NCBI GenBank assembly: GCA_002269645.1
Contig: NIVC01001475.1
Coordinates: 1-64,000 of the forward strand
DNA length: 64,000 bases
Direction of reading: 5' to 3'
DNA from: Macrostomum lignano
Taxonomy: Eukaryota
A program made the position numbers and the translations under genes. Positions within the stretch are counted from its first letter, which is position 1. Each line of letters opens with the position of its first letter. Below are positions 8,609 through 63,839 of the stretch, one piece after another. The notes under the pieces are model-generated. The model searched no databases. It was not told the origin of the DNA and worked only from the letters and a program-made list of their open reading frames with translations.

Positions 8609-8633
8609 ATGCAACTACAGATAAGTCCGAGAG
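8609..8633 (+). CDS. Exon 1 coding part (MQLQISPR-G), start of signal peptide
   Basis: ATG 8609; donor G|GTAAGG at 8634; phase 1 joins exon 2 to give MQLQISPRGICSAIALLTFVCVSA, a typical signal peptide. Confidence 0.75.
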
Positions 8634-8720
8634 GTAAGGATTTTTCTTCTTTTGAAGTTTTTGAAACTTACCTAGACCATTAATATATTGAAACGCTGGT
8701 ATTCTTTTCTGCTCCTATAG

Positions 8721-8907
8721 GAATTTGTTCTGCAATAGCTCTGCTAACTTTTGTCTGTGTATCTGCTGCCACTGCACCCAATGGCTATCTTGGCTGCATC
8801 GAGTTGTCAAGTTTGTCTTCAGCTGTCACTGCTGGAGCAGTCAGCATATCAAATTGGCAGGAGTTGCCCACTCCAGCAGCCTGCTTTTATCGCTGCTCCG
8901 CTTTGGG
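8721..8907 (+). CDS. Exon 2: signal peptide h-region and WSC N-terminal part
   Basis: Acceptor ctcctatag|; reads ICSAIALLTFVCVSAATAPNGYLGCIELSS...PTPAACFYRCSALG; donor GG|GTGAGT. This frame is not in the ORF track. Confidence 0.9.
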
Positions 8908-8924
8908 GTGAGTAACTTAGGAAT

Positions 8925-9660
8925 CGCTCGCTTGCTCACTCACTCACTCACTCACTCCCTCACTCACTCACTCACTCACTCACTCCCTCACTCACTCACT
9001 CACTCACTCACTCACTCACTCACTCACTCACTCACTCACTCACTCACTCACTCACTCATTCACTCACTCACTCACTCGCTCACTCGCTCACTCACTAACT
9101 CACTCACTCACTCACTCACTCACTCCCTCACTCACTCGCTCACTCACTCATTCACTCACTCACTCACTCATTCACTCACTCACTCACTCGCTCACTCACT
9201 CACTCACTAACTAACTCACTCACTCACTCACTCACTCACTCACTCACTCACTCACTCACTCACTTACTCACTCACTCGCTCACTCACTTACTCACTCACT
9301 CGCTCACTCACTCATTCACTCACTCACTCATTCACTCACTCACTCGCTCACTCACTCACTCACTAACTCACTCACTCACTCACTCACTCACTCACTCACT
9401 TACTCACTCACTCACTCACTCACTCACTCACTCACTCACTCACTCACTCACTCACTCACTTACTAGCTTACTCACTCACTCACTCACTCACTCACTCACT
9501 TACTCAGCCACTCACTCATTCACTCACTCGCTCACTCACTCATTCACTCACTCGCTCACTCACTCATTCACTCTCTTACTTAACCACTCAATCACTCACT
9601 CACTCTTTCACTCGGTCACTCACCTAATTACTCAATTACTCACCTTTTCAGTCACTCAAT
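8925..9660. repeat. (TCAC)n microsatellite, intron 2
   Basis: Direct reading. Confidence 0.97.
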
Positions 9661-9836
9661 CACAGAAAAATCAGTCACTTACCCGCTTACTTACCCCCTT
9701 ACAATCTCGCTAAAATTCTCACAATATTCTCAGCTCAAGCTCGCATAAGAGCATGCAAATAGTACTGATATCTTTGTTACAACTGACTCGCACTACCAAC
9801 TGTAGAATTCTAAAACAAAATCGCTCCCATTCGCAG

Positions 9837-9962
9837 ACAAGCGCGGCCTCTGCTGGGCAGAAACGGGTCCTGCAGCTGTGCTAAAATTAAAGCCGGAAAA
9901 TCCTGGCCCGCCGAACCTGGCGACCCCATTCTGTCCGCTATCGGGGCCGGCCGCTGCGAACC
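9837..9962 (+). CDS. Exon 3: WSC middle part
   Basis: Acceptor cccattcgcag|; QARPLLGRNGSCSCAKIKAGKSWPAEPGDPILSAIGAGRCE(P); donor CC|GTAAGC; phase 2 at both ends. Confidence 0.85.
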
Positions 9963-10030
9963 GTAAGCCACTTTCGATGCCTTCTTGATATTGTGGTATG
10001 AGTATCACTTGGTCAGGGAGTTCTGAACGA

Positions 10031-10550
10031 GATTATTGATCCCTATTGAAGCTGGACTGTGGGGATTAATTATTCCTATTGAAGCTGGACTGTGGGGATT
10101 AATTATTCCTAATGAAGCTGGACTGTAGGGATAAATGATCCCTATTGATGATGGACAGGTAGGGATTATTGATCCCTATTGAGGATGAACAGGTATGGAT
10201 TATTGATCCCTATTGATGATTGACAGATAGGGATTATTGATTCCTAATGAAGCTGGACTGTAGGGATTAATGATCCCTATTGAGGATGGACAGGTAGGAA
10301 TTATTGATCCCCATTGATGATGGACAGGTAGGGATTATTGATCCCTATTGATGATGGACAGGTAGGGGCTATTGATCCCTATTGAGGATGGACAGGTAGG
10401 AATTATTGATCCCCATTGATGATGGACAGGTAGGAATTATTGATCCCCATTGATGATGGACAGGTAGGGGCTATTGATCCCTATTGATGATGGACAGGTA
10501 GGGGCTATTGATCCCTATTGATGATGGACAGGTAGGGGTTATTGATCCCA
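10031..10550. repeat. About 34-bp minisatellite, intron 3
   Basis: ggacaggtagggattattgatccctattgatgat and variants. Confidence 0.93.
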
Positions 10551-12708: not shown

Positions 12709-12890
12709 CTGTCCGAACCGGCCTCAGCTGATGTGCGGGTCCGTCGCCTCTACCGCTGCTATGTACTCCGCCAACCGTTTGCTTCCTAGCGGCAAAATAT
12801 TTGTTAATCTAACTAACAGAGCGCGCCAATTCGAACGAGCTAATCTAAGCTTGGCTATTGCAATGATTGGCGACTTCGACAACAATATCT
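12709..12890 (+). CDS. Exon 4: WSC C-terminal part and linker
   Basis: Acceptor tttcaaatcag|; CPNRPQLMCGSVASTAAMYSANR...DFDNNI completes the WSC C..C.....CG......Y motif; donor T|GTAAGT. Confidence 0.88.
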
Positions 12891-12995
12891 GTAAGTTTAT
12901 CTTTTTTACATAGCAGCCAAGTTATTTACATTGGATACCGAAAATTAAAGGTATCATTTTTATTTAAATAAGACACTATTATTTTATTATTTCAG

Positions 12996-13178
12996 CTGAA
13001 TTTAATGTCAGTCTAAAAATCACTGGCCAACCAAATTTGGTAATCCAGCAGCCGCTGTTACGTCATCAACAATTATCGTCATCAACTGAGCAGCCGTTTT
13101 TGCCAGTCGGATTTTCAAATCATTCTTTAATAGCGACTCTTCAACCGGTGTTTGTTTTTGCTGGCCCGCTAAATTTTA
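12996..13178 (+). CDS. Exon 5
   Basis: Acceptor ttattatttcag|; EFNVSLKITGQPNLVIQQ...FAGPLNF; donor A|GTGAGT; phase 1/1. Confidence 0.8.
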
Positions 13179-13283: not shown

Positions 13284-14605
13284 GATTGAAATTATAAGGA
13301 TCAGAGTTAGAAAATGGCACATTCCCATCTCTGAAGGAGGATTGAAATTATAAGGATCAGAGTTAGAAAATGGCACATTCCCATCTCTGAAGGAGGATTG
13401 AAATTATAAGGATCAGAGTTAGAAAATGGCACATTCCAATCTCTGAAGGAGGATTGAAATTATAAGGATCAGAGTTAGAAAATGGCACATTCCCATCTCT
13501 GAAGGAGGATTGAAATTATAAGGATCAGAGTTAGAAAATGGCACATTCCCATCTCTGAAGGAGGATTGACATTATAAGGATCAGAGTTAGAAAATGGCAC
13601 ATTCCAATCTCTGAATGAAGATTGAAATTATAAGGATCAGAGTTAGAAAATGGCACATTCCCATCTCTGAAGGAGGATTGACATTATAAGGATCAGAGTT
13701 AGAAAATGGCACATTCCCATCTCTGAATGAAGATTGGCATTATAAGGATCAGAGTTAGAAAATGGCACATTCCCATCTCTGAAGGAGGATTGACATTATA
13801 AGGATCAGAGTTAGAAAATGGCACATTCCAATCTCTGAAGGAGGATTGACATTATAAGGATCAGAGTTAGAAAATGGCACATTCCCATCTCTGAAGGAGG
13901 ATTGAAATTATAAGGATCAGAGTTAGAAAATGGCACATTCCCATCTCTGAAGGAGGATTGAAATTATAAGGATCAGAGTTAGAAAATGGCACATTCCCAT
14001 CTCTGAAGGAGGATTGAAATTATAAGGATCAGAGTTAGAAAATGGCACATTCCCATCTCTGAATGAAGATTGGCATTATAAGGATCAGAGTTAGAAAATG
14101 GCACATTCCCATCTCTGAAGGAGGATTGACATTATAAGGATCAGAGTTAGAAAATGGCACATTTCAATCTCTGAAGGAGGATTGAAATTATAAGGATCAG
14201 AGTTAGAAAATGGCACATTCCCATCTCTGAAGGAGGATTGACATTATAAGGATCAGAGTTAGAAAATGGCACATTCCCATCTCTGAAGGAGGATTGAAAT
14301 TATAAGGATCAGAGTTAGAAAATGGCACATTTCAATCTCTGAAGGAGGATTGAAATTATAAGGATCAGAGTTAGAAAATGGCACATTCCCATCTCTGAAT
14401 GAAGATTGGCATTATAAGGATCAGAGTTAGAAAATGGCACATTTCAATCTCTGAAGGAGGATTGAAATTATAAGGATCAGAGTTAGAAAATGGCACATTC
14501 CCATCTCTGAAGGAGGATTGACATTATAAGGATCAGAGTTAGAAAATGGCACATTCCCATCTCTGAATGAAGATTGGCATTATAAGGATCAGAGTTAGAA
14601 AATGG
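13284..14605. repeat. 56-bp tandem array, about 23 copies, intron 5
   Basis: gattgaaattataaggatcagagttagaaaatggcacattcccatctctgaaggag. Confidence 0.97.
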
Positions 14606-15309: not shown

Positions 15310-17565
15310 CTCTGTCCTTCTCCTGTCTCTCCCTTGCTTCCCTCCCTGTCTCTTCTCCTTCGCTTTTGTGCATGTCTCGCTTCTCTCCCTGTCTCTTCTC
15401 TTTCGCTTTTGTCCATGTCTCGTTTCTCTCCCTGTCTCTTCTCCTTCGCTTTTGTCCATGTCTCGCTTCTCTCCCTGTCTCTTCTCTTTCGCTTTTGTCC
15501 ATGTCTCGCTTCTCTCCCTGTCTCTTCTCCTTCGCTTTTGTGCATGTCTCGCTTCTCTCCCTGTCTCTTCTCCTTCGCTTTTGTCCATGTCTCGCTTCTA
15601 TCCCTGTCTCTTCTCCTTCGCTTTTGTCCATGTCTCGCTTCTCTCCCTGTCTCTTCTCCTTCGCTTTTGTGCATGTCTCGCTTCTCTCCCTGTCTCTTCT
15701 CTTTCGCTTTTGTCCATGTCTCGCTTCTCTCCCTGTCTCTCCCTCGCTTCTCTCCCTGTGTCTCCCTCTCTTCTCTCCCTGTGTCTCCCTCTCTTCTCTC
15801 CCTGTCTCTCCCTGTCTTCTCTCCCTGTCTCTCCCTGTCTTCTCTCCCTGTGTCTCCCTGTCTTTTCTCCCGTTCTTCCCCTCGCTTCTCTCCTTGTCTC
15901 TCCCTCGCTTCTCTCCCTGTCTCTCCCTGTCTTCTCTCCCTGTCTCTCCCTCTCTTCTCTCCCTGTCTCTCCCTGTCTCTTCTCTTTCGCTTTTGTCCAT
16001 GTCTCGCTTCTCTCCCTGTCTCTTCTCCTTCGCTTTTGTCCATGTCTCGCTTCTCTCCCTGTCTCTTCTCTTTCGCTTTTGTCCATGTCTCGCTTCTCTC
16101 CCTGTCTCTTCTCCTTCGCTTTTGTGCATGTCTCGCTTCTCTCCCTGTCTCTTCTCCTTCGCTTTTGTCCATGTCTCGCTTCTCTCCCTGTCTCTTCTCC
16201 TTCGCTTTTGTCCATGTCTCGCTTCTCTCCCTGTCTCTTCTCTTTCGCTTTTGTCCATGTCTCGCTTCTCTCCCTGTCTCTTCTCCTTCGCTTTTGTGCA
16301 TGTCTCGCTTCTCTCCCTGTCTCTTCTCCTTCGCTTTTGTCCATGTCTCGCTTCTCTCCCTGTCTCTTCTCCTTCGCTTTTGTCCATGTCTCGCTTCTCT
16401 CCCTGTCTCTCCCTCGCTTCTCTCCCTGTGTCTCCCTCTCTTCTCTCCCTGTGTCTCCCTCTCTTCTCTCCCTGTGTCTCCCTCGATTCTCTCCCTGTGT
16501 CTCCCTGTCTTCTCTCCCGTTCTTCCCCTCGCTTCTCTCCCTGTCTCTCCCTCGCTTCTCTCCCTGTGTCTCCCTCTCTTCTCTCCCTGTGTCTCCCTCT
16601 CTTCTCTCCCTGTGTCTCCCTCTCTTCTCTCCCTGTGTCTCCCTCTCTTCTCTCCCTGTGTCTCCCTCTCTTCTCTCCCTGTCTCTCCCTGTCTTGTCTC
16701 CCTGTGTCTCCCTCTCTTCTCTCCCTGTGTCTCCCTCTCTTCTCTCCCTGTGTCTCCCTCTCTTCTCTCCCTGTGTCTCCCTCTCTTCTCTCCCTGTGTC
16801 TCCCTCTCTTCTCTCCCTGTCTCTCCCTGTCTTCTCTCCCTGTCTCTCCCTGTCTTCTCTCCCTGTGTCTCCCTGTCTTTTCTCCCGTTCTTCCCCTCGC
16901 TTCTCTCCTTGTCTCTCCCTCGCTTCTCTCCCTGTCTCTCCCTGTCTCTCCCTGTCTCTCCCTCTCTTCTCTCCCTGTCTCTCCCTGTCTTCTCTCCCTG
17001 TGTCTCCCTGTCTTTTCTCCCGTTCTTCCCCTCTCTTCTCTCCCTGTCTCTCCCTCGCTTCTCTCCCTGTCTCTCCCTCGCTTCTCTCCCGTTCTTCCCC
17101 TCGCTTCTTTCCCTGTCTCTTCCTCGCTTCTCTCCCGTTCTTCCCCTCGCTTCTTTCCCTGTCTCTTCCTCGCTTTTCTCCCGTTCTTCCCCTCGCTTCT
17201 TTCCCTGTCTCTCCCTCGCTTCTCTCCCGTTCTTCCCCTCGCTTCTTTCCCTGTCTCTTCCTCGCTTTTCTCCCTGTCTCTCCCTCGCTTCTTTCCCTGT
17301 CTCTCCCTCGCTTCTCTCCCGTTCTTCCCCTCGCTTCTTTCCCTGTCTCTCCCTCGCTTCTCTCCCGTTCTTCCCCTCGCTTCTTTCCCTGTCTCTCCCT
17401 CGCTTCTCTCCCGTTCTTCCCCTCGCTTCTTTCCCTGTCTCTCCCTCGCTTCTCTCCCGTTCTTCCCCTCGCTTCTTTCCCTGTCTCTCCCTCGCTTCTC
17501 TCCCGTTCTTCCCCTCGCTTCTTTCCCTGTCTCTTCCTCGCTTTTCTCCATGTCTCTCTCTCGCC
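15310..17565. repeat. Composite pyrimidine-rich (CT) tandem array; 43-bp and shorter units
   Basis: gtctcgcttctctccctgtctcttctccttcgcttttgtccat and related units; source of the 700-870 aa low-complexity ORFs. Confidence 0.95.
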
Positions 17566-20541: not shown

Positions 20542-20583
20542 TTGGGAGTATTTAGCGTTAAATTTTTATCTAATAAATTTCAG

Positions 20584-21023
20584 GTGTAGAAGTGGAATCA
20601 GCTGATCTTGGACCACTCGCAGTGGCTCGCACAGACCCTCTGCTACTCATGTCTGAGCCGTTTCAATCAGCATACCTACCGTTGTCAGTCACGCTACTCC
20701 AGCTTGGTTACCATAGCAACCAGACAGTGGAATCAGCGGTCCAAAAATCTTCGACTAAAATTTTAGTTAAAACGCCTGCCGACCAAAAACCTGTTGCTTC
20801 CTGCAGCAGACTCGATACGCCTCATCAATCACCTGTTGCGACTGTGTTGTTCACAAAAATTGTTAATCAATTTTCCGTTTGTTCAAATGACAATTTATCG
20901 ATTTTGTCTGCCCAATCAGTGCGTATCAATTATCGATTTATCGATTTGGAAGGTTTAGATAGCGGATCTGATGTTGAAGAATCATTGGATAGAAGCGTCT
21001 GCGATGGACATTGTTGTAACTTT
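20584..21023 (+). CDS. Exon 6
   Basis: Acceptor aaatttcag|; frame of ORF 20592-21044; ends DGHCCNF with donor TTT|GTGAGT. Confidence 0.85.
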
Positions 21024-21207
21024 GTGAGTATTCTGCAATTGTAGCCACTGAGGGCCAACCACCCCCCCCAAATGCACAGAGAATGTACATACCTGACGAT
21101 TAGAAAGTCCTGCTAATGAATTTTAAAGCGAAATAAATCAACTCCGAAATTTGGAATCTTCATAAACTTGATGTGGCGAAAACAATACCCCTGACTCAAA
21201 CTTGCAG

Positions 21208-22849
21208 ACCTACACGGCAACCAGACCAGGCTCGAAAGTCGTTCAAATGGAGTTTAACTATGGAAAAAATTCGGAATTTGCCAATCTAATTATTAACTTA
21301 GTCTCGCAATCGGTTGCTAATGTGACTATGCGGTTGCTAAGTGATCATGGTTCAAAATTTGCCTTCACTAACAACATAATTGTTTACAAATTGGACTTTG
21401 TTACGAATTTGGTCTTCAAGACAAACAATTCCAAATCGGTGTCAGTTGAGTTGACATTTTTGCCCGAATCTGTCAATCAAATGGTTTCTAAGAAATGGAC
21501 GGCCATTGATTACGATCGAATTGGCTGTCTGGCTTCTGCACAAGTTGCCGTGAATTTTACGGAAAAATTGGGCATTGCTGTCACGCCCATGCTGCTTGTG
21601 TCGGGTCACTCTGGTCTGTTGGCCAGATTTTTGGCCGATCCAATTAGCGTCCATAGCAACCTAGCTATTGCCATAGCAACCATTCAAGGACCGTCAATAG
21701 CAATGATTAATTCGCATCCGTCCGTTGTTGCCAACTATACTGTCGTTGCTAAGCTAGATGACGTCACTCGAATCGATTGGTCACTGCTAAGACTGTTGCC
21801 TAGCAACGATCAGTCGCTTAGCAACCCGATGTTTCGGCGTTCGATTGGCAACAATAAAAGTGCATCGATTGAACTGATTGCTAATCATGGCACTAGCGGC
21901 GGTCGCTTCCTCATCACCTGTCGTCTGTCTAATCCAGCTTCCGAGTTGATCTTGTCCAGTCGAATAATCCTAGTTGCCATGCCAACCGCCGTGTTGAAGC
22001 CTCAACTTGTCGGTTTCGAATCGAACTTCCGGCAATCTACTGTTGGAAACTGTCTGATGCAGACCGATCCCCGGTTGCCAGCCGGATGGTCAGGCCGGGC
22101 GCTGATTCATTTGGCAAAATCAGCCGATTGGCAGCCTGCGGATTTGCGTATACAAATAAAAGTACACATGTACTCTGTGAACTCTAACAGACTAGTTGAC
22201 ACTTTATTGGCTAATCGGCTGAATTCAACGCATTTTTCCGCTTTAATCAACATGTCCGACTACAATAGAGACGATTTTGAGTACAGCTTGAGTTTAACGG
22301 CCAGTTTTAGCGAAGCTGGAAGCTTCATCAGGGGTCAGTTTCTTGCCAATGTTACAATTGTGCCAACCTTTGCCAGTGCCGCAGCTCTCGACAGCATTGT
22401 GTCGAGTGTTGTAAAATCGCGCGATGCGGCTGGGTTGTACTCGCTGACTGTGACAGTTGCTGGGCTATTAAGGCATTATGCCTCTTATCTATCGATAATT
22501 TGTCAGCCTAAATGTCGCTCGACACTAGTTGCCCAGTATGCTTCTACAAGTTTGCCTAATAGTACGCAAAATCTAGTGTTCGACTTTGACTTTGTTGATA
22601 AAATTTTAACGGAATCAAATAGCGACAATAATAGCTATGGAATCGTGTCGATTGTGGCGAAAGGGCTTTTCGACTCCGTCATCGACTGTCGACGCGATGT
22701 CGAAATTAGTCGGGTTCTTAGAAATGTCTATGTAGATCGGCGACAACATTTTACTCGGGTTGAGTCGACTGCCGAAAATCTTCGGTTAAAGATGCTGTCA
22801 GTTGGCGATACTGATCCTGTTGTCATTGGTTACGAGCATAGCGACGGAG
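21208..22849 (+). CDS. Exon 7 (1,642 nt), beta-strand-rich glycosylated ectodomain
   Basis: Acceptor aacttgcag| phase 0 inside ORF 21202-22989; non-repetitive, sequon-rich; donor G|GTAAGG at 22850. Confidence 0.9.
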
Positions 22850-22889
22850 GTAAGGAGAGCAACTTCTGGGATACTATGAGAATTTATGA

Positions 22890-23392
22890 GGAATTAATTG
22901 AACATTTCCATGATCAAATCTGTGGGAAAGTCTATGATCAGGTCCATGAGCGAGTCTATGATCAGATCTATGAGCGATTTTGTATATGATCAGATCAGTG
23001 ACGAGTCTATGATCAGTTCTATGAGCGAGTCTATGATTAGATCTATGAGCGAGTCCATGATCAGATTTTTGAGCGAGTCCATGATCTATGAGCGAGTCTA
23101 TGATTAGATCTATTAGCGAGTCCATGATCAGATTTTTGAGCGAGTCCATGATCAGACTCGCTCAAAAATCTTGAGCGAGTCCATGATCAGATTTGAGCGA
23201 GTCCATGATCAGATTTTTGAGCGAGTCCATGATCAGATTTTTGAGCGAGTCCATGATCAGATTTTTGAGCGAGTCCATGATCAGATTTTTGAGCGAGTCT
23301 ATGATCAGATCTATGAGCGAGTTTGTATATGATCAGATCTATGAGCGAGTTTGTGTATGATCAGATCTGTGAGCGAGTCTATGATCAGATAC
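22890..23392. repeat. Degenerate about 24-bp tandem array, intron 7
   Basis: gagcgagtc(c/t)atgatcagat(ctat/tttt). Confidence 0.9.
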
Positions 23393-23424: not shown

Positions 23425-23655
23425 ACTACGGTTCCTCATCAACCAGCAATCTAGTTGGACTATGGACCTGGAGTTGCTATAGCCGCAGCTCAACTAACTC
23501 TTCATCACATAACTCATCCTTAAGTTCCTCATCAACGGTACTACCTGGATCAGTTACATCTTTAGCAATTCCTCGGTCGCTCATTGTTGATAATTGTTGT
23601 CATGACAACTGCAGCTCGAGTATTTCTATGGTTGTAAATCTGACAATATCTACTT
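23425..23655 (+). CDS. Exon 8: Ser-rich segment
   Basis: Acceptor aactttttcag|; DYGSSSTSNLVGLWTWSC...VVNLTIST; donor T|GTAAGT; phase 1/1. Confidence 0.82.
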
Positions 23656-24176: not shown

Positions 24177-24213
<37 letters not shown>

Positions 24214-24230
24214 GTGTCTGTGTGTCTGTG

Positions 24231-24325
<95 letters not shown>

Positions 24326-24400
24326 GTCTGTGTGTCTGTGTGTCTGTCTGTCTGTCTGTCTATCTGTCTGTGTGTCTGTGTGTCTGTCTGTGTGTCTGTG

Positions 24401-24443
<43 letters not shown>

Positions 24444-24520
24444 GTCTGTCTGTCCTTCTGTCTGTCTGTCTGTCTGTCTTTCTGTCTTTCTGTCGGTCTG
24501 TCTGTCTGTCTGTCTGTCTA
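24177..24520. repeat. (TCTG)n microsatellite, intron 8
   Basis: Direct reading. Confidence 0.97.
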
Positions 24521-24831
24521 TCTTAGTATCTTAGGGTTTGTCTTCCTATCTTCCTCTCCGTCTTTCTGTCTTCGAACCCCCATGTTTTAGTTTTCGTTTT
24601 AATAAAATTTAATATTTTAGTTTTTACATAGCTATCTGTATTATAGTAGTCTGTCTACTGCACAACAAGCACTATGAGAGTTGAGACTTTATTTTTGCAA
24701 GTTCCCTTTCTTCTGGCTCTAGAAACCTCAGTTTTACTATACATTTTATGCTCTATTTTTAGTTACAAATGACTCACGCAGAGTCTCAATACTTGATTGA
24801 GTCGGTTCCAATTCCTATTTGCATTTCGCAG

Positions 24832-25168
24832 CCGCAGTGCAAGCTCTACCAACTAATAATGACGGTGCTTATCTATTCACCGGCTCCGAGGCGGCGGCAT
24901 CCTTTGCGTCGGGTCGCTTTGATCTTTCTGTCATCGGTGCCGACGCCGGCAGTTCTATTATTGGCAGTAAAATTTGGCCCAGCCTTAGCCTAGTCAGCAT
25001 TGCCCAATTAACGGGCGAACCGGCTGCCGCCAACCTAACCTGGGAGGCGGCTTGCTCAGCTACAGCCGACTGTCGAGTTGATTGCAGCTTAACTAGCGGC
25101 GGAGTTGCCATGGCAACTGGGATTTTTTCGACTAGAAGAACCATTACTAAGGAGGCGAAGTTTTTTAG
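24832..25168 (+). CDS. Exon 9
   Basis: Acceptor tttgcatttcgcag|; frame of ORF 24819-25178; donor AG|GTGCGA, phase 2 matches exon 10. Confidence 0.8.
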
Positions 25169-25925: not shown

Positions 25926-26177
25926 GATGTCTTCAATTTGGCAAAATATAAGCGATTCGTCTGTCGCCATTGAATGCCTAGTTGCTATGGAAACCGGTAC
26001 ACGCGTCGCCAGACTGCCTTTGTCAACAGCCGTGTTAAAATCGCCTTGGTTAGCGCTTGCCGCGAAAAATTGCAGTTCGATACATGATAAGCATCGAAAG
26101 TTGGCGTTGATTTGCGATCAGTTTCTCAATTATTCGACTGCCGAATATGCGGATGGCGGAGCTAACAACTACCTTGT
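25926..26177 (+). CDS. Exon 10
   Basis: Acceptor tttctattctag|; frame of ORF 25927-26181; donor GT|GTAGGT just before the in-frame stop, phase 2 matches exon 11. Confidence 0.75.
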
Positions 26178-28391: not shown

Positions 28392-28587
28392 GACGCCATT
28401 TACAATTGCTGATATGCAGTGGACCGATGTGACCGACAGTGACAAGCGGTCATTGCTAGATGATACTGACCCAATCTGCACTACTGGACCGTATCATAGG
28501 CTGTGGCAATTGGAACTCATTAGAACTGGTTCCAGTTTGAATGAAACACAGATCAATAACACGATAATCGTTGCCTTTTCTCAGTCT
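28392..28587 (+). CDS. Exon 11
   Basis: Acceptor accattgcag|; TPFTIADMQWTDV...IIVAFSQS; donor TCT|GTAAGT phase 0. Confidence 0.82.
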
Positions 28588-28641
28588 GTAAGTACTTGAG
28601 GGTTGCAGTCTTTTCTTTTTTAAAAATAGATTTTCCGAGTA

Positions 28642-34658: not shown

Positions 34659-35023
34659 TCCAGCGGGTTGTACCTGCCTCTACCTGGCCCGGGAATCTAC
34701 ACAATGACCGTCGCCTCTAATCCGTTCGACGTCGCTGGTGAATCAGCTTCAGCCGCCCCCGCCGCCGCCACTTGTCAAATAGTTCGACAATTAAATACCG
34801 ATCGGAGGCCGAGTTTGAAAACCTCTCGTGATTGCCTAATCGATCAGTCGCGGCTTTCAATTGCAACCGCTCCGCCCGTGCCTCCAAACTCAACTGCTGT
34901 TGAATTGCTAATTGGCGAGTTGTTGAGTGTCTGGCTGCTCGCGGCTGGAGGCGACAGGCGCTGCGACTGGACTGAGCTGGTCTGGCATCTGGGCGACGGA
35001 AGCGGAGTTGATGAAGCTTTCGC
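34659..35023 (+). CDS. Exon 12: PKD-like C-terminal strand and start of next PKD domain (WHLGDGS)
   Basis: Acceptor ccgcctacag| phase 0; [15 protein letters not shown] and VWHLGDGS motifs; donor GC|GTGAGT. Confidence 0.9.
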
Positions 35024-41516: not shown

Positions 41517-41519
41517 TCT

Positions 41520-53500: not shown

Positions 53501-56500
53501 TTAGTGCAGAAAATGCTTCAGTTTGTTAGAATGCAATCAGAACAGATTCCTAGAAAGTGAGCTAGTCCAGCATCAAGGCAGAACATCTGGATGTGTAACG
53601 AAAGTCTCTCGGAGACTCCTGGCTCAGATTATCGCCTAGAAGTGCTGTGGAGTAGCTGGTCCACCTAACCTACAGACACAACTCGAACAGATTTCTCTGT
53701 CTGTTTGAGGCTCTGGCTCTCAGAGCCGCCGAGAAAGTTTAGTGCCGAGAATGCTTCAGTTTGTTAGAATGCAATCAGAACATATTCCTAGAAAGTGAGC
53801 TAGTCCAGCATCGAGGTAGAACATCTGGATGTGTAACGAGAGGCTCTCGGAGATTCCTGGCTCAGATTATCGCCTAGAAGTGCTTTGGAGTAGCTGGTCC
53901 ACCTAACCTACAGACACAACTCGAACAGATTTCTCTGTCTGTTTAGGGCTCTGGCTCTTAGGTGGTCCACATAACCTACAGACACAACTGAAGCAGCTCT
54001 CTCAGTCTGTTTGAGGCTTTGGCTCTCAGTAGCTGGTCCACCTGAACCTACAGACACAACTCGAACAGATTTCTCTGTCTGTTTGAGGCTCTGGCTCTCA
54101 GAGCCGCCGAGAAAGTTTAGTGCAGAAAATGCTTCAGTTTGTTAGAATGCAATCAGAACATATTCCTAGAAAGTGAGCTAGTCCAGCATCAAGGCAGAAC
54201 ATCTGGATGTGTAACGAGAGGCTCTCGGAGATTCCTGGCTCAGATTATCGCCTAGAAGTGCTGTGGAGTAGCTGGTCCACCTAACCTACAGACACAACTC
54301 GAACAGATTTCTCTGTCTGTTTAGGGCTCTGGCTCTTAGGTGGTCCACATAACCTACAGACACAACTGAAGCAGCTCTCTCAGTCTGTTTGAGGCTTTGG
54401 CTCTCAGTAGCTGGTCCACCTAACCTACAGACACAACTCGAACAGATTTCTCTGTCTGTTTGAGGCTCTGGCTCTCAGAGCCGCCGAGAAAGTTTAGTGC
54501 CGAGAATGCTTCAGTTTGTTAGAATGCAATCAGAACATATTCCTAGAAAGTGAGCTAGTCCAGCATCAAGGTAGAACATCTGGATGTGTAACGAGAGGCT
54601 CTCGGAGATTCCTGGCTCAGATTATCGCCTAGAAGTGCTTTGGAGTAGCTGGTCCACCTAACCTACAGACACAACTCGAACAGATTTCTCTGTCTGTTTG
54701 AGGCTCTGGATCTCAGAGCCGCCGAGAAAGTTTAGTGCAGAAAATGCTTCAGTTTGTTAGAATGCAATCAGAACAGATTCCTAGAAAGTGAGCTAGTCCA
54801 GCATCAAGGCAGAACATCTGGATGTGTAACGAGAGGCTCTCGGAGATTCCTGGCTCAGATTATCGCCTAGAAGTGCTGTAGAATAGCTGGTCCACCTAAC
54901 CTACAGACACAACTCGAACAGATTTCTCTGTCTGTTTGAGGCTCTGGCTCTCAGAGCCGCCGAGAAAGTTTAGTGCCGAGAATGCTTCAGTTTGTTAGAA
55001 TGCAATCAGAACAGATTCCTAGAAAGTGAGCTAGTCCAGCATCAAGGCAGAACATCTGGATGTGTAACGAAAGTCTCTCGGAGACTCCTGGCTCAGATTA
55101 TCGCCTAGAAGTGCTGTGGAGTAGCTGGTCCACCTAACCTACAGACACAACTCGAACAGATTTCTCTGTCTGTTTGAGGCTCTGGCTCTTAGGTGGTCCA
55201 CCTAACCTACAGACACAACTCGAACAGATTTCTCTGTCTGTTTGAGGCTCTGGCTCTTAGGTGGTCCACATAACCTACAGACACAACTGAAGCAGCTCTC
55301 TCAGTCTGTTTGAGGCTTAGGCTCTCAGAAGGTGGTTCACCTCACCTACAGACACAACTCGAACAGATTTCTCTGTCTGTTTGAGGCTCTGGATCTGAGG
55401 TGGTCCACATAACCTACAGACACAACTGGAACAGATTTCTGTGTCTGTTTGATTGTCAGTTATTTTTATTTTCTACCTTTGTAGGAGCCTGTGGTTGATT
55501 TTGTTCGCCTGAGCTCGACGAGACTGACTGCGTTTCACCGAGATGAAGGTTAAAACGAACTGTAAAAGAAGATTTAAACCACTAATTGACGAGAAATATA
55601 GAAAGGTTCATCATAGAGCTGAGCTGACGAAAGTGGATTCGATGGCTGAGTAAGCTGAAATTCGTGAGAGAGGCAATGACAGATCAATAACAGAAGCGGT
55701 CCCGGACCACGGAGGCAGGGAAGGTCCAGGAGAATATTTCGTAGAAAAAATAAGAAGATAAGGCCATCATCTGCGTGAACGAAAAGATGAAAGTCGGTAA
55801 AATGATTGGCTTATCATATGATTGCTCACCAACTCATTCAGTATAATAGGACTGATGTAGTCAAAACAATTTAATTTCAGTTTTAGTAACTTTTGTCGTT
55901 ATTAAAAATGCCCTTCAACTTCTTGTAGGCTCGTACTCGGATGACCTTTTTAACTAATGGAATCTTACGTTTGTTAACATGTATTTGAAGCATACATTTT
56001 GACCTAAATTAGTTTTAATGAGTTTACAGTTAGTATTTGATATGATTCTGTATTTATTTTCAAAATGCTTTATTTTCATTCACCTTCTTGTATTCACGCG
56101 ACGCAACTAACTAATGCGATCGTACATTTGTTTAACCCGATTAACCCGATTAGTAATGCTAAATAAATTGGTTTGAACTTGGGATATTTTCATTAAATGA
56201 CGTCGTAACCCTTTTATCTGTTCTTTTTGAGAATTTCTGTTTTAATTAGTTCAAAAGAACAGTTTAAAGCAATAAATTTTCTACAACGAAAGAGGTCTAA
56301 CTAAACCAACTGTTTTTTTGCGGTCCACCTAACCCGGTCCCCAAAACGTAGTTAGTGAACCACCACAGTTTCCCCGAACTGGCTATTCCGTCAAGTTAAC
56401 AAAAAGATAACCCTAGCTAGCCTTTCGCGTTGTCAAAACAGACTCTATTTTTTAACCGGAATTGCGTGGTCCACGTAACGCATTAACATAACTCAGGTCC

Positions 56501-56526: not shown

Positions 56527-57789
<1,263 letters not shown>

Positions 57790-57923: not shown

Positions 57924-58223
57924 GCCGGTCAGCAATGCCAGCATTTTCCACGCCTACTTCCGGCCGGGTAATTACACTGTGCTGTTGGCTTTCGGCGCTT
58001 CTATTGCTTCCAGCAATTCGACTCCTTCCGGTGGGTCTGCAGCGGAGCGCCGGCTCGCAGTGAGGGTGTTGCCGGTTTCTACGGTGCGAAATCTGACTCT
58101 GTCCTGTCTGAGCTGTCAGACAGCTGCGTCTCCTGTTGCTGCCGCTGTGCAATCTGAGTTCGTGCACCTGCTGGGTTCCAATTCACCTGCTAATGGCGTT
58201 AATGAGGCCACGTTTCGACTCAG
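57924..58223 (+). CDS. Exon 13: completes PKD domain (HAYFRPGNYTVLL)
   Basis: Acceptor tccaccgcag| phase 2; joins exon 12 to read [35 protein letters not shown]; donor AG|GTAATG. Confidence 0.85.
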
Positions 58224-58264: not shown

Positions 58265-59532
58265 TAGTGAGAGAGTTAGCTAATGAGAGAGGTAGACAGT
58301 GAGAGATAGGCAGTGAGAGAGGTAGACAGTGAGAGAGGTAGACAGTGAGAGAGAGGTAGACAGTGAGAGAGAGGTAGACACTGAGAGAGGTAGACAGTGA
58401 GAGAAATAGACAGTGAGAGAGGTAGACACTGAGAGAGATAGACAGTGAGAGAGGTAGATAGTGAGAGAGGTAGACAGTGAGAGAGGTAGATAGTGAGAGA
58501 GGTAGACAGTGAGAGAGGTAGACAGTGAGAGAGGTAGACAGTGAGAGAGGTAGATAGTGAGAGAGGTAGACAGTGAGAGAGGTAGACAGTGAGAGAGGTA
58601 GATAGTGAGAGAGGTAGACAGTGAGAGAGGTAGACAGTGAGAGAGGTAGATAGTGAGAGAGGTAGACAGTGAGAGAGGTAGATAGTGAGAGAGTTAGACA
58701 GTGAGAGAGAGGTAGACAGTGAGAGAGGTAGACAGTGAGAGAGGTAGATGGTGAGAGAGGTAGATAGTGAGAGAGGTAGACAGTGAGAGAGAGGTAGATA
58801 GTGAGAGAGGTAGACAGTGAGAGAGGTAGACAGTGAGAGAGAGGTAGACAGTGAGAGAGGTAGACAGTGAGAGAGAGGTAGACAGTGAGAGAGGTAGACA
58901 GTGAGAGAGGTAGACAGTGAGAGAGGTAGACAGTGAGAGAGGTAGACAGTGAGAGAGGTAGACAGTGAGAGAGGTAGACAGTGAGAGAGGTAGACACTGA
59001 GAGAGGTAGACAGTGAGAGAGGTAGACAGTGAGAGAGAGGTAGACAGTGAGAGAGGTAGATAGTGAGAGAGGTAGACAGTGAGAGAGGTAGATAGTGAGA
59101 GAGGTAGACAGTGAGAGAGGTAGATAGTGAGAGAGGTAGACAGTGAGAGAGGTAGACAGTGACAGAGGTAGACAGTGAGATAGGTAGACAGTGGGAGAGG
59201 TAGACAGTGGGAGAGGTAGACAGTGAGAGAGGTAGACAGTGAGAGAGGTAGACAGTGAGATAGGTAGACAGTGGGAGAGGTAGACAGTGAGAGAGGTAGA
59301 CAGTGAGATAGGTAGACAGTGGGAGAGGTAGACAGTGAGAGAGGTAGACAGTGAGAGAGGTAGACAGTGAGAGAGGTAGATAGTGAGAGAGGTAGACAGT
59401 GAGAGAGGTAGATAGTGGGAGAGGTAGACAGTGAGAGAGGTAGACAGTGAGAGAGGTAGACAGTGAGAGAGGTAGACAGTGAGAGAGGTAGATAGTGAGA
59501 GAGGTAGACAGTGAGAGAGGTAGACTGTGAGT
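58265..59532. repeat. 16-bp tandem array, intron 13
   Basis: gagaggtagacagtga. Confidence 0.96.
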
Positions 59533-59800: not shown

Positions 59801-59958
59801 AACTGACGCCAAATTTCCGCTCATCGCTCTGGTGAACTTCGGCGATGGCCACTCAACCGACTTGACGCTTCCTGGGCCTGAAGCACCCATGGCGGCTGGG
59901 TCGGCCCCAGATGGCCGGTTTATGACTTCGTTGGAATTCGGCCACGCGTATACAGAGC
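59801..59958 (+). CDS. Exon 14: PKD domain core (VNFGDG...HAYTE)
   Basis: Acceptor tctgcttcag|; (R)TDAKFPLIALVNFGDGHST...EFGHAYTE; donor C|GTGAGT; not in ORF track. Confidence 0.92.
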
Positions 59959-60037: not shown

Positions 60038-60040
60038 GGT

Positions 60041-60074
<34 letters not shown>

Positions 60075-60112
60075 CTGTCTGTCCGTCCGTCTGTCTGTCT
60101 GTCTGTCCGTCC

Positions 60113-60146
<34 letters not shown>

Positions 60147-60147
60147 G

Positions 60148-60188
<41 letters not shown>

Positions 60189-60207
60189 TAGTGTCCGTCT
60201 GTCTTAG

Positions 60208-60262
<55 letters not shown>

Positions 60263-60276
60263 CTGTCTGTCCGTCC

Positions 60277-60322
<46 letters not shown>

Positions 60323-60323
60323 G

Positions 60324-60354
<31 letters not shown>

Positions 60355-61102: not shown

Positions 61103-61625
61103 CCTCTGGTCTTTACCCTCCAGAATCTGCCCCCCTTGGGTCTTTACCCTCCAGAATCTGCCCCCCTTGGGTCTTTACCCTCCAGAATCCGTCTCCTTGG
61201 GTCTTTACCCTCCAGAATCTGCCCCCTTGGGTCTTTACCCTCCAAAATCCGTCTCCCCTTGGGTCTTTACCCTCCAGAATCTGCCCCCTTGGGTCTTTAC
61301 CCTCCAGAATCTGCCCCCCTTGGGTCTTTACCCTCCAGAATCTGCCCCCCTTGGGTCTTTACCCTCCAGAATCTGCCCCCCTTGGGTCTTTACCCTCCAG
61401 AATCTGCCCCCCTTGGGTCTTTACTCTTCAGAATCTGCCCCCCTTGGGTCTTTACCCTCCAGAATTTGCCCCCCTTGGGTCTTTACCCTCAAGAATCTGC
61501 CCCCCCGTGGGTCTTTACCCTCCAAAATCCGTCTCCTTGGGTCTTTACCCTCCAAAATCCGTCTCCTTGGGTCTTTACCCTCCAGAATCTGCCCCCCTTG
61601 GGTCTTTACTCTTCAGAATCCGCCC
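61103..61625. repeat. About 31-bp tandem array, intron 14
   Basis: ttgggtctttaccctccagaatctgcccccc. Confidence 0.94.
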
Positions 61626-62516
61626 CTTCCCCCTCAACAAATTTCTAGTTGCGCTATTCATTTTTGGGCAGAAAATACATGTAAGTAGGATATGAAATTA
61701 CCATAGAAGCTTAATTTTATAAACAAAAAGCTCCATGAATATCAATAGAGCTATTAGAAAGGCAATACACGTCCAAAGATGAGCATTGAGTCTGCCTCCT
61801 ATCAAAAGCAATAACAATTTCTGTGCTGAAAGAATGAAAAACTCTTATCTCTGTAATGTTTCTTTTCAGTAAAACCTGTCTCCTAAAATTTTCTAAGAAA
61901 GCGTTTTTATGAGGCTTTTAAATAAATTGGATTTTCCAATCATTTCTAGCGAATAGATATTTATTTTATTTTGAATTTGTTTTAATTGAATGACTGAATT
62001 CTTCATTTCCGGCATTGCTCAATAATTAATAAAATGTCTCTCAGCTTTCTAAGAAAGTGGCTTTAGGTACCATCGAGGCGTGCTCCGATGTTGTCTGCTC
62101 ATGTGTCTCTATGATTACCTTTTCTCTATATAAGCATTTCTCTTTCGTGCGCCATTGGAAACTTGAATTAAGAGCCGAGCGTATTTGCTTGATGTCTATT
62201 TTAATCAAATATATTGCAAGCCTGTCGCTTTTGCCGATGCTATGCAGTTGCTTGTTCTAGTTATTGTCAGTGTGTGCCTGTGTGGTCTCGGCTATTGTTC
62301 TGCTTCAAGTGTTCTCTCTTTCTCTTTCTTTCTCTCTCTCTCACCCCTGCTCGTTGAGTCTGTCTGGCTGTGTTGTGTTGTGTGCTTGAAATTATATAAG
62401 CATTAATGCATATATGTATGTATATATATATATTTGTGAATTAGCACAAGCCGAGAGAGCCCCTCCTTTCACACATTTTTCGTGCAGTTTTTTTCTCTTT
62501 CATTCTCTTCTCACAG

Positions 62517-62801
62517 CCGGACTCTATTCGGTAACCGTCAGCATCTTGACAGCATCATCGGGTGCCAGCAATCGAACTGTGGTGTCCGCTGGCCTGACAC
62601 TGAAAACGATTAGCCCGTCTATCAAGCTCGCTAATAGAACCCTAATTAGTCATGATTATTATAGTTATGATTTTGCCACTTCTGCTAAAGCCAGTTTTTG
62701 GGCCTATCTGTCTGGTCAGCTGCCCGAACTCGAGAGAAACGGGCTTGGCTTCTATGTCCTGTGGGATTTCGGCGACGGGATCAGTTTGGAGCAAACTGGG
62801 T
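62517..62801 (+). CDS. Exon 15: PKD end (PGLYSVTV) and next PKD (VLWDFGDG)
   Basis: Acceptor ctcttctcacag|; canonical WDFGDG; donor T|GTAAGT. Confidence 0.93.
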
Positions 62802-62889
62802 GTAAGTATGCAGTGATGCCTCACATGTGTCATTTATTTGTGCGTTTCATGATCCGCTGCGATCCCCCACCTCAGTGCATCCAGGGTCG

Positions 62890-63168
62890 GACTCACAACT
62901 TGAAGGTTGTGGGTTCGATTCCCGAACTCACTCGGAACAATTTGTGTCCTTGAGCAAGACACTTAACTCTGCATTGCTTCAGTTCACCCAGCTGTAAAAT
63001 GGGTGCCAGCATTAGCTGGGGTAATTGAGGGTGTGTGGCGACCCCTCAGTCCTTGGACTGAACAGCCGTACGCAGCCTTCAGATGCGCTTCGCAATAGCT
63101 GCGGCTGAGCTGTCGGTTGCACATCTGCCCATTAGAGCAGGTGTAATCAACTAATTATATTATTATTA
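62890..63168 (+). mobile_element. 5'-truncated tRNA-derived SINE with CORE-like central domain, intron 15
   Basis: B box GGTTCGATTCC 62912-62922; tgtgtccttgagcaagacacttaactctgcattgcttcagttcacccagctgtaaaatggg resembles the MIR/CORE consensus as recalled; (TAT)-rich tail; A box missing. Confidence 0.8.
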
Positions 63169-63401
63169 GGGCCAGATGCAACACTTCCCGATACATCCAG
63201 GGTCAGATGCGACCCGATGCATCCAGGGTCCGAGGCAACCCCCTCCCCATGCATCCAGGCCCCGATGCATCCAGGATCCAGGCCCTGATGCATCCAGGCC
63301 CCGATGCAATCAACATCGTCCATTCTGTTCAGCTATGCGCTATTTCTGAAATTTAATATTTTTGAAGTTATTTATATATTTTCCTATTTTTTTCTATTCA
63401 G

Positions 63402-63545
63402 ACGCAACTGTATTCAGCAGCAATCATGTATATAAGCAAGCCGGAGTTTACCGACTCACTGTTTCGCTTCTAAGTGTCGTCGCTTCTAAAAAGTCGGTGC
63501 TAACCTCTACCAGCGATTTGGTCAACGTTATTGATGCAATTGAAT
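63402..63545 (+). CDS. Exon 16: PKD end (HVYKQAGVYRLTV)
   Basis: Acceptor ttttctattcag|; donor T|GTAAGT; phase 1/1. Confidence 0.92.
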
Positions 63546-63634
63546 GTAAGTACACTAAACCCCTATATGTTTCATAGATTGAAAAAACGAGCTATTTATT
63601 AAAATGCATAAATAAATGATAAATTATCCTCTAG

Positions 63635-63839
63635 CTTGCAGCATTGTCAAGTCCTATTCGCACACGGCCGGGGATCTGGTCAGGCTCGAAGGATTTATTC
63701 AACCAGCCGGCGCCACCACCGCTGCTCACTGGTTGGTGTCCACTTATCACGTGAGCGGCGACCGGAGAACAGTGAGCACGGTGTGCCGACCAATTGGTAG
63801 CCTAGTGACTTGCGAGTATTCTGAGCGGCACAACTATGA
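63635..63839 (+). CDS. Exon 17 (3' boundary uncertain)
   Basis: Acceptor cctctag| phase 1; CSIVKSYSHTAGDLVRLEG...; best donor GA|GTGAGT at 63840, but GTGAGC donors at 63751 and 63772 are alternatives. Confidence 0.7.

What the first reader, a model, noticed from the sequence alone, without database searches (positions are those of the whole stretch)
8609..63839. Hidden 17-exon polycystin-1-like gene largely invisible in the ORF track
Seen: 5,258 coding nt over 55 kb with all intron phases compatible and domain motifs completed across junctions. Exons 1, 2, 3 and 14 are absent from the ORF track, so automated annotation would likely fragment the gene. Known: WSC plus PKD repeats occur in polycystin-1 family sensory/mechanosensory receptors. 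Inference: a divergent invertebrate PKD1-like receptor.
Basis: partly seen in the sequence, partly recalled or inferred. Interest (0 to 1): 0.72.

Follow-up and report, generated by a model that had tools for sequence, protein, structure and literature searches.

The report
Flatworm WSC–PKD-repeat gene, 5' part
The window holds the first 16 or so short exons of a real but largely unannotated Macrostomum (flatworm) gene, spread over 55 kb of repeat-filled introns, which encodes the extracellular part of a WSC-plus-PKD-repeat glycoprotein; it may be a polycystin-1/REJ-type receptor, but the part that would prove that lies beyond the window.

Summary
On the + strand, from ATG 8609 to a donor at 63839/63840, I rebuilt an open chain of 16 GT-AG exons. 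It is 4,646 nt (1,548 aa) with no stop and all phases compatible. Exons 1-6 match two Macrostomum lignano UniProt fragments at 88-100% identity, including an 11-nt microexon. Exons 7-16 have no protein match anywhere. They share the codon usage of exons 1-6, each scoring best in its chosen frame. Joining them creates PKD domains that the separate ORFs do not show: 55.4 bits, E=6e-15, against at most 19.9 bits. The product has a signal peptide, a weak but full-length WSC domain, about 550 aa specific to Macrostomum, a Ser/Cys-rich stretch, and three Pfam-detected PKD repeats plus two candidates. It has no transmembrane segment and twice the expected number of N-glycosylation sites. The polycystin-1-like reading is plausible but untested, because REJ, GPS, PLAT and the transmembrane domains would lie past the window end and Pfam REJ is absent inside it. 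I rate this a new member of a known kind, of modest interest.

The parts
8609..8633 (+). Exon 1 (25 nt): start codon and MQLQISPR(G); donor GAG|GTAAGG
   Evidence: ATG is preceded by an in-frame stop. P0001 and P0002 begin MQLQINPRG. Model.
8721..8907 (+). Exon 2 (187 nt): signal-peptide h-region (ICSAIALLTFVCVSA) and first half of the WSC domain
   Evidence: tblastn of P0001 aa 7-71, 98.5% identity. Hydrophobic peak at aa 5-23. Splice sites CTATAG| and |GTGAGT.
9837..9962 (+). Exon 3 (126 nt): middle of the WSC domain
   Evidence: tblastn of P0001 aa 72-113, 100% identity. Splice sites TCGCAG| and |GTAAGC.
12709..12890 (+). Exon 4 (182 nt): end of the WSC domain (CEPCPNRPQLMCGS) and linker
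   Evidence: tblastn of P0001 aa 114-180, 88% identity. Pfam WSC covers aa 31-123, profile 1-81/82, 17.9 bits.
12996..13006 (+). Exon 5: 11-nt microexon encoding (S)EFN. An alternative donor after 13039 would also keep the frame.
   Evidence: This is the only way to join the phase-1 donor of exon 4 to the phase-0 acceptor of exon 6. It reproduces NNISEFNTYTAT of P0001 and NNISEFKTYTAT of P0002.
20584..21023 (+). Candidate alternative exon X (440 nt). It is phase-compatible for exon 4 -> X -> exon 6, skipping the microexon. Unconfirmed.
   Evidence: Acceptor TTTCAG|, donor |GTGAGT, open frame. Codon score of 0.095 per codon for the surrounding stop-free segment 20577-21041, second highest of 57 intronic stop-free segments. 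Absent from both paralogue models. No Pfam hit.
21208..22849 (+). Exon 6 (1,642 nt, aa 178-724): beta-rich, N-glycosylated region specific to Macrostomum. UniRef calls the paralogue 'REJ domain-containing'.
   Evidence: tblastn of P0001 aa 174-705, 94% identity. No Pfam family. phmmer of P0001 against 1.84 billion representatives finds only P0002. AlphaFold2 pLDDT 27.7, not usable.
22450..22506 (+). 57-nt in-frame, stop-free candidate intron inside exon 6 (GTGACA...TGTCAG), encoding VTVAGLLRHYASYLSIICQ if retained
   Evidence: These 19 aa are missing from both P0001 and P0002 in alignment A2. GT and AG ends seen.
23425..23655 (+). Exon 7 (231 nt): Ser/Cys-rich stretch. P0002's model instead uses an acceptor at 23524 in another frame and stops at 23563-23565.
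   Evidence: Splice sites TTTTTCAG| and |GTAAGT, phase match with exon 6. Codon LLR +9.3 in frame against -15.1 and -37.4. P0002 tail maps to 23524-23562.
24832..25168 (+). Exon 8 (337 nt)
   Evidence: Best acceptor and only strong donor of its ORF, phase-compatible on both sides. Codon LLR +30.6.
25926..26177 (+). Exon 9 (252 nt); donor TGT|GTAGGT is the weakest of the set
   Evidence: Codon LLR +13.8.
28392..28587 (+). Exon 10 (196 nt): start of a degenerate PKD-like repeat (PKD-0)
   Evidence: Codon LLR +7.5. Aligns with the other repeats in A1. Not detected by Pfam.
34659..35023 (+). Exon 11 (365 nt): end of PKD-0 ([12 protein letters not shown]) and first half of PKD-A (VWHLGDGSG)
   Evidence: Codon LLR +37.0.
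57924..58223 (+). Exon 12 (300 nt): second half of PKD-A (HAYFRPGNYTVLL) and start of PKD-B. It follows a 22.9-kb intron.
   Evidence: Best PKD_4 stretch aa 1164-1207 spans the 1184/1185 junction. Neither exon alone gives a PKD hit.
59801..59958 (+). Exon 13 (158 nt): middle of PKD-B (VNFGDG ... HAYTE)
   Evidence: PKD 20.3 bits, PKD_4 22 bits for the joined repeat.
62517..62801 (+). Exon 14 (285 nt): end of PKD-B (PGLYSVTVS) and first half of PKD-C (WDFGDG)
   Evidence: Acceptor score 6.9, donor |GTAAGT. PKD 19.9 bits alone.
63402..63545 (+). Exon 15 (144 nt): second half of PKD-C (HVYKQAGVYRLTVS)
   Evidence: Joined with exon 14, PKD reaches 32.2 bits, E=1.1e-7, above Pfam's cut-off.
63635..63839 (+). 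Exon 16 (205 nt): start of a further repeat (PKD-D). It ends in phase 2 at donor TGA|GTGAGT, so the gene continues beyond the window.
   Evidence: Codon LLR +7.5. Alignment A1.

Best explanation
What it is. The window carries the 5' part of one long protein-coding gene of Macrostomum lignano or a very close relative. There are at least 16 exons and at least 1,548 codons. The exons are scattered over 55 kb, of which 59% is tandem repeat.

What is shown about the product. The encoded polypeptide is the N-terminal extracellular part of a large glycoprotein. In order it contains:
- a signal peptide;
- a divergent WSC (carbohydrate-binding type) domain with 8 cysteines;
- a lineage-specific region of about 550 aa;
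- a Ser/Cys-rich linker;
- about 260 aa of unknown fold;
- a tandem run of three Pfam-detected PKD (Ig-like) repeats, with two more degenerate repeat candidates flanking them. This run is still in progress where the window ends.

What is inferred. The combination of WSC and PKD repeats, together with a paralogue that UniRef names 'REJ domain-containing', is the combination known from polycystin-1 and from sea urchin SpREJ6/7/10. I therefore think the missing 3' part most likely encodes REJ-GAIN/GPS, PLAT and a polycystin-type membrane core. On that reading this ectodomain would act as a glycan- or matrix-binding, force-bearing tether. It would gate or localise a PKD2-like channel in ciliated sensory cells or sperm.
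For: Organism and 5' exons:
- 94% identity to UniRef A0A1I8HST6 ('REJ domain-containing') and 91% to A0A1I8HH91 ('WSC domain-containing'), both from M. lignano.
- tblastn places the exons at 88-100% identity.
- The microexon reproduces SEFN.

Chain:
- 16 GT-AG exons, no stop, all phases compatible.
- At about 8 of the 10 new junctions, the top-scoring acceptor and donor of neighbouring ORFs are the compatible pair. By my estimate the chance of that is about (1/3)^8.
- A codon model trained only on exons 1-6 scores every one of exons 7-16 positive and highest in the chosen frame: 0.10-0.30 per codon, against a mean of -0.13 (SD 0.13) for intronic ORFs.

Domains:
- PKD 55.4 bits, E=6.4e-15, three stretches, two of them spanning junctions.
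- WSC match over the full profile length, E=0.0037.

Extracellular character:
- N-terminal hydrophobic segment, no other TM-grade segment, and 31 NxS/T sequons against 15.8 expected.

Family logic:
- SpREJ6, 7 and 10 and human PKD1 carry WSC. The paper also states that PKD repeats together with REJ were known only in the PKD1/REJ family (PMC1934368).
Against: - No REJ, GPS, PLAT or polycystin-channel match occurs in the 1,548 aa. The defining C-terminal half lies outside the window.
- The order WSC, then the 'REJ'-named region, then the PKD repeats is not that of polycystin-1.
- The N-terminal 700 aa have no detectable relative outside Macrostomum.
- The PKD region's only database hit is a bacterial PKD protein at E=3e-3. 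Homology to polycystins is therefore not demonstrated at sequence level.
- Two of the three Pfam PKD repeats are individually below Pfam's cut-off.
- There is no transcript evidence for junctions 6 through 15.
- The paralogue model P0002 ends in a stop just after exon 6.
- A planarian study found that planarian PKD1-like proteins lack this complex N-terminus (PMC11448475).
Confidence: 0.5

Rival explanations
1. The gene structure is the same, but the full-length product is a secreted, GPI-anchored or single-pass adhesion or matrix glycoprotein. It would be built from WSC, a lineage-specific module and PKD repeats, with no polycystin membrane core. It would work as a glycan-binding adhesive or structural protein, not as a channel-associated receptor.
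For: - No TM segment and no REJ, GPS or PLAT in 1,548 aa.
- The domain order is unlike polycystin-1.
- PKD domains are widespread in unrelated extracellular proteins. The nearest database and PDB matches are a bacterial PKD protein, collagenase PKD domains and SorCS2.
- Even within the REJ family, SpREJ10 has no predicted TM helices (PMC1934368).
- The sequence is lineage-specific and apparently fast-evolving.
Against: - The gene is clearly not finished at the window end. The last exon ends in phase 2 at a good donor.
- WSC together with PKD repeats in one metazoan protein is characteristic of the PKD1/REJ family.
- UniRef names the paralogue REJ domain-containing.
Confidence: 0.32
2. There are two transcription units, or a short gene plus relic exons. 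Exons 1-6 would form a gene for a secreted WSC protein of about 740 aa that terminates at the stop at 23563, as in P0002. The PKD-repeat exons downstream would belong to a separate gene or would no longer be expressed.
For: - P0002 (602 aa) uses an acceptor at 23524 and ends at a stop. That 13-aa tail is 100% conserved in the window.
- P0001 stops exactly at the exon 6 donor.
- No annotated protein covers exons 8-16; exon 7 was not part of either query.
- A 55-kb gene with a 22.9-kb satellite-filled intron is hard to transcribe and to assemble.
Against: - Exon 7 read in my frame has a strong TTTTTCAG acceptor, matches the phase of exon 6, stays open for 231 nt and has codon LLR +9.3. The two other frames, one of which P0002's tail uses, score -15.1 and -37.4.
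- Exons 7-10 contain no start codon followed by a signal peptide that could begin a separate secreted protein.
- All ten downstream exons keep intact frames and host-like codon usage, which argues against decay.
Confidence: 0.14
3. The downstream chain is a chance assembly of open frames in repeat-rich non-coding DNA, and only exons 1-6 are real.
For: - The window is full of long spurious ORFs from mini- and microsatellites.
- There are no homologues for exons 8-16 (exon 7 was not queried), and I chose the splice sites by hand.
Against: - Pfam PKD at E=6e-15 appears only after joining.
- Three WxFGDG-type and three HxY...GxYxV-type motifs occur only on the + strand, in the order and pairing a PKD array requires.
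- Codon-usage and frame tests pass in 10 of 10 exons.
- None of the model's exons lies in a tandem-repeat array.
Confidence: 0.03

Closest known systems
Macrostomum lignano UniProt/UniRef fragments A0A1I8HST6 (705 aa, 'REJ domain-containing protein') and A0A1I8HH91 (602 aa, 'WSC domain-containing protein')
   Same: Near-identical paralogues or alleles of exons 1-6 (88-100% per exon), with the same signal peptide, WSC domain, SEFN/SEFK microexon and large exon.
   Different: - Both models stop at or just after exon 6 and contain none of the PKD-repeat exons.
- Both omit 19 aa that the window can encode (22450-22506).
- They differ from the window by about 6% in exon 6, so the window is another copy.
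Sea urchin SpREJ6, SpREJ7 and SpREJ10 (PKD1/REJ family; PMC1934368)
   Same: Invertebrate proteins with a signal peptide, a WSC domain and PKD repeats in a large glycosylated ectodomain. SpREJ10 shows that family members can lack TM helices.
   Different: - No sequence similarity was detectable here.
- REJ, GPS and PLAT were not seen in the window.
- In the SpREJ proteins the PKD repeats usually precede the REJ domain. Here the region named REJ precedes the PKD repeats.
Human polycystin-1 (PKD1)
   Same: WSC near the N-terminus, followed by a tandem array of PKD (Ig-like) repeats in the ectodomain. The motifs WDFGDG and HxYxxxGxYxVxV are present.
   Different: - No LRR, C-type lectin or LDL-A domain.
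- About 870 aa of unrelated sequence lies between WSC and the PKD array.
- Three Pfam-detected repeats (plus two candidates) are visible, against 16 in polycystin-1.
- REJ-GAIN-TM11-PLAT is not verifiable.
- There is no significant pairwise or profile hit to any polycystin.
Planarian (Schmidtea mediterranea) PKD1-like proteins, e.g. pkd1L-2 (PMC11448475)
   Same: Flatworm members of the polycystin family, used in ciliated mechanosensory neurons. They are the natural functional analogy if this gene has the membrane core.
   Different: According to that paper they carry REJ, PLAT and polycystin domains but not the complex WSC/PKD-repeat N-terminus, which the authors state is found only in chordate PKD1. 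The Macrostomum gene shows the opposite visible half.

Membership tests
Polycystin-1 / REJ (PKD1) family | Signal peptide and large glycosylated extracellular N-terminus | tested here: met
   Hydrophobic segment at aa 5-23 after Met1. No other TM-grade segment. 31 NxS/T sequons against 15.8 expected.
Polycystin-1 / REJ (PKD1) family | PKD (Ig-like) repeats in the ectodomain | tested here: met
   Pfam PF00801: 55.4 bits, E=6.4e-15, three stretches. PF18911: 49.9 bits. Individual repeats score 18.5, 20.3 and 32.2 bits.
Polycystin-1 / REJ (PKD1) family | WSC domain (present in PC1 and SpREJ6/7/10; not universal in the family) | tested here: inconclusive
   PF01822: 17.9 bits, E=0.0037, profile positions 1-81 of 82, below the 27.8-bit cut-off. 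8 Cys in aa 34-122. UniRef names the paralogue a WSC domain-containing protein.
Polycystin-1 / REJ (PKD1) family | REJ module between the PKD repeats and GPS | tested here: inconclusive
   No Pfam REJ match anywhere in the 1,548 aa at E up to 5. The canonical position lies beyond the window. The only positive hint is UniRef's name for A0A1I8HST6, which I could not reproduce.
Polycystin-1 / REJ (PKD1) family | GAIN/GPS autoproteolysis domain | not testable with these tools
   It would be encoded 3' of 63839. No contig extending the window could be retrieved.
Polycystin-1 / REJ (PKD1) family | PLAT/LH2 domain after TM1, and 11 TM with polycystin/TRP-like channel domain | not testable with these tools
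   No TM segment occurs in the part present. The remainder lies outside the window.
PKD-domain superfamily (Pfam PF00801 / PF18911) | Beta-sandwich repeat with WxFGDG and HxYxxxGxYxV motifs, scoring above the family threshold | tested here: met
   and alignment A1.

The most novel reading that the evidence does not exclude
This could be a Macrostomum-specific, fast-evolving member of the polycystin-1/REJ family with an unusual module order: WSC, then a REJ-like region, then PKD repeats, then presumably GPS, TM and PLAT. If so, the complex PC1-type ectodomain is not confined to deuterostomes. Its lack of detectable relatives would then fit a role like that of suREJ or PKDREJ in sperm-egg or sperm-female-tract recognition, in a hermaphrodite used as a sexual-selection model, more than a role in mechanosensation.
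Probability: 0.15. Interest if true: 0.6.

Novelty: new member of a known kind. Interest (0 to 1): 0.35.

Why it matters
- For annotation, this is a concrete case in which a repeat-rich flatworm genome hides a long gene. True exons make up 8% of the span. Minisatellite ORFs of up to 872 aa swamp any ORF-based view. Public protein models stop after exon 6. An 11-nt microexon is needed to keep the frame.
- For biology, if the 3' half carries the polycystin core, Macrostomum would have a PC1/SpREJ-style WSC+PKD-repeat ectodomain. A recent planarian study reports this to be absent from planarian PKD1-like proteins and restricted to chordate PKD1 (PMC11448475). That would bear on how the polycystin ectodomain evolved.
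- If the core is absent, this is one more lineage-specific extracellular PKD-repeat glycoprotein and of local interest only.

Tried and rejected
1. Pfam on single ORFs gave only a sub-threshold PKD hit. Joining the exons was necessary.
P0001 was used instead and found only its own cluster.
3. Two word-indexed protein searches with the downstream exons found nothing, or one bacterial PKD protein at E=3e-3.
4. phmmer of the full model against PDB gave no hit. A profile of the five repeats against PDB gave chance picornavirus VP3 matches, then weak collagenase and SorCS2 PKD domains, and no polycystin.
5. AlphaFold2 of exon 6 with a 3-sequence alignment gave pLDDT 27.7. I discarded it and ran no fold search.
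6. hhalign of the PKD-repeat profile against exon 6 matched only the 10-residue GLYSLT motif, probability 0.2%. Exon 6 is therefore not demonstrably made of PKD repeats.
7. Exact-product look-ups for P0001, P0002 and three window ORFs, made to obtain flanking or paralogous DNA, found nothing on record.
9. blastp of candidate exon X against the model showed no internal similarity.
10. Rfam on the window found no RNA family.
11. A literature search found no paper on polycystin, REJ or WSC genes in Macrostomum.

Full report
**Source and setting**

The window is eukaryotic and extremely rich in tandem repeats. The largest non-repetitive + strand ORF (21172-22986) is 94% identical to UniRef A0A1I8HST6 and 91% identical to A0A1I8HH91. 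Both are from the flatworm Macrostomum lignano and are named 'REJ domain-containing protein' and 'WSC domain-containing protein'. The window is therefore M. lignano or a very close relative. It is a copy that differs slightly from the two deposited models.

**Rebuilding the gene, exons 1-6**

tblastn of the two proteins places four blocks at 8714-8908, 9838-9963, 12710-12910 and 21196-22848. Reading the DNA shows the following.
- Exon 1 is 25 nt.
- Exon 4 has a phase-1 donor at 12890/12891 that cannot join the phase-0 acceptor of the large exon at 21208.
- The gap is bridged by an 11-nt microexon (12996-13006; TTATTTCAG|CTGAATTTAAT|GTCAGT). It encodes exactly the SEFN present in P0001 (SEFK in P0002).
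- Since two independent models contain it, I take the microexon as real.

**Rebuilding the gene, exons 7-16**

No protein evidence exists downstream. For every non-repetitive stop-free + strand segment I listed acceptors and donors with a simple consensus score and chained them by phase.
- At about eight of the ten junctions, the top-scoring sites of neighbouring segments were already the compatible pair.
- The result is 16 exons, all GT-AG, 4,646 nt and 1,548 codons without a stop.
The gene continues past the window.

**Are exons 7-16 coding?**

1. A codon log-odds model trained only on exons 1-6 scores all ten remaining exons positive, and each scores best in the chosen frame. Values are 0.10-0.30 per codon. 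The 57 intronic stop-free segments have a mean of -0.13, SD 0.13 and a maximum of 0.128.
2. Separate ORFs give Pfam nothing except one PKD hit of 19.9 bits. The joined protein gives PKD at 55.4 bits (E=6.4e-15) and PKD_4 at 49.9 bits.
3. The best stretches span the exon 14/15 and exon 11/12 junctions.
4. Cut into single repeats, they score 18.5, 20.3 and 32.2 bits.
5. Motif scanning finds the WxFGDG-type and HxY..GxYxV-type motifs only on the + strand and in alternating order.
6. The exon 11/12 junction bridges a 22.9-kb intron that contains a 12-kb satellite.

I regard exons 11-15 as well supported. Exons 7-10 and 16 are reasonably supported by splice sites, phase and codon usage only.

**Variants and discrepancies**

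- Both paralogue models lack 19 aa that correspond to 22450-22506, a 57-nt stop-free stretch beginning GT and ending AG. It is probably a short in-frame intron. Splicing it gives 17 exons and 4,589 nt.
- A 440-nt segment (20584-21023) has good splice sites and could replace the microexon in phase. The stop-free segment containing it (20577-21041) has the second-best codon score among intronic ORFs. It is absent from the paralogue models and has no similarity to anything.
- P0002 ends through an acceptor at 23524, inside my exon 7 in another frame, with a stop at 23563. Codon statistics favour my frame. A short isoform cannot be excluded.

**The protein**

Features in order along the 1,548 aa:
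- Met1, then a hydrophobic signal-type segment.
- aa 31-123: a WSC match over the whole profile (17.9 bits, E=0.0037, below the cut-off) with eight cysteines.
- aa 178-724 (exon 6): no Pfam family.
- A Ser/Cys-rich exon 7.
- About 260 aa without a match.
- From about aa 1000: a degenerate repeat, three Pfam-detectable PKD repeats, and the start of a further repeat.

There is no TM-grade segment. There are 31 N-glycosylation sequons against 15.8 expected. What is visible is therefore an extracellular, glycosylated ectodomain.

**Relatives**

- phmmer of P0001 against 1.84 billion cluster representatives finds only its sister P0002.
- The downstream exons find nothing in 5.8 billion proteins except a bacterial PKD protein at E=3e-3.
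- PDB searches are uninformative.
- AlphaFold2 on exon 6 failed, with pLDDT 27.7.
- The protein is therefore lineage-specific at sequence level. Only its domain types link it to known families.

**Comparison with known families**

WSC plus PKD repeats is the signature of the N-terminus of polycystin-1. In invertebrates it is found in sea urchin SpREJ6, 7 and 10. The same paper notes that PKD repeats together with REJ were known only in this family, and that SpREJ10 lacks TM helices (PMC1934368). A planarian study reports that planarian PKD1-like proteins have REJ, PLAT and polycystin domains but not this complex N-terminus (PMC11448475).

The defining features of the family (REJ in place, GAIN/GPS, PLAT, 11 TM) lie outside the window and could not be tested. 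Pfam REJ is not found inside it. I therefore do not file the gene as a polycystin-1 family member. I rate that reading the most likely single explanation, at about 0.5. A non-polycystin secreted or adhesion protein is at about 0.3, and a split or truncated gene at about 0.14.

**Verdict**

This is a new member of a known kind, mainly of annotation value unless the 3' half shows the polycystin core.

Noticed in passing
window 5550-8340, - strand: Degenerate non-LTR (LINE-type) retrotransposon just upstream of the gene. It has a reverse transcriptase (RVT_1, E=3.6e-24) and a weak AP-endonuclease match. The reading frame is broken across at least three frames. GC is about 65% in the 6001-8000 bin, against 35-48% around it.
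   Followed up: partly
window 43259-55452: A satellite array of about 12.2 kb lies inside the 22.9-kb intron 11. A 68-71-bp subunit is organised into 139-, 238- and 377-bp higher-order periods at 96-98% identity. Composition is flat (GC 0.47). The array contains no ORF of 80 aa or more on either strand.
   Followed up: partly
window 8609-63839: 59% of the gene span (32,560 of 55,231 nt) is mini- or microsatellite and only 8% is exon. Examples are 24 bp x93 (18311-20541), 46 bp x50 (15322-17564), 56 bp x24 (13284-14605), 16 bp x78 (58266-59531) and (TGTC)n of 1.2 kb (56528-57717). These arrays produce the longest ORFs in the window, up to 872 aa, on both strands.
   Followed up: partly
window 8935-9623, 24177-24523, 28637-28871, 37055-37587, 37902-38132, 41208-41532, 56528-57717, 60040-60354: Two tetranucleotide microsatellite families recur in many introns of the same gene: (TCTG/TGTC)n and (CTCA/ACTC)n with its complement (GAGT)n. 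They occur in both orientations.
   Followed up: no
window 22450-22506: A 57-nt in-frame, stop-free GT...AG stretch inside the large exon is absent from both M. lignano protein models. If retained it extends a PKD-like GLYSLTVTV motif. If spliced it breaks that motif.
   Followed up: partly
window 20584-21023: A stop-free 440-nt segment with consensus splice sites could serve as an alternative exon between exon 4 and exon 6. The stop-free segment containing it (20577-21041) has the second-best codon score among intronic ORFs. It is not present in the paralogue models.
   Followed up: partly
window 63147-63353: An intronic stop-free segment between exons 14 and 15 has the highest codon score of all non-exon ORFs (0.128 per codon). 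Its translation contains a short internal repeat (MHPGPDASR...). I did not examine it further.
   Followed up: no
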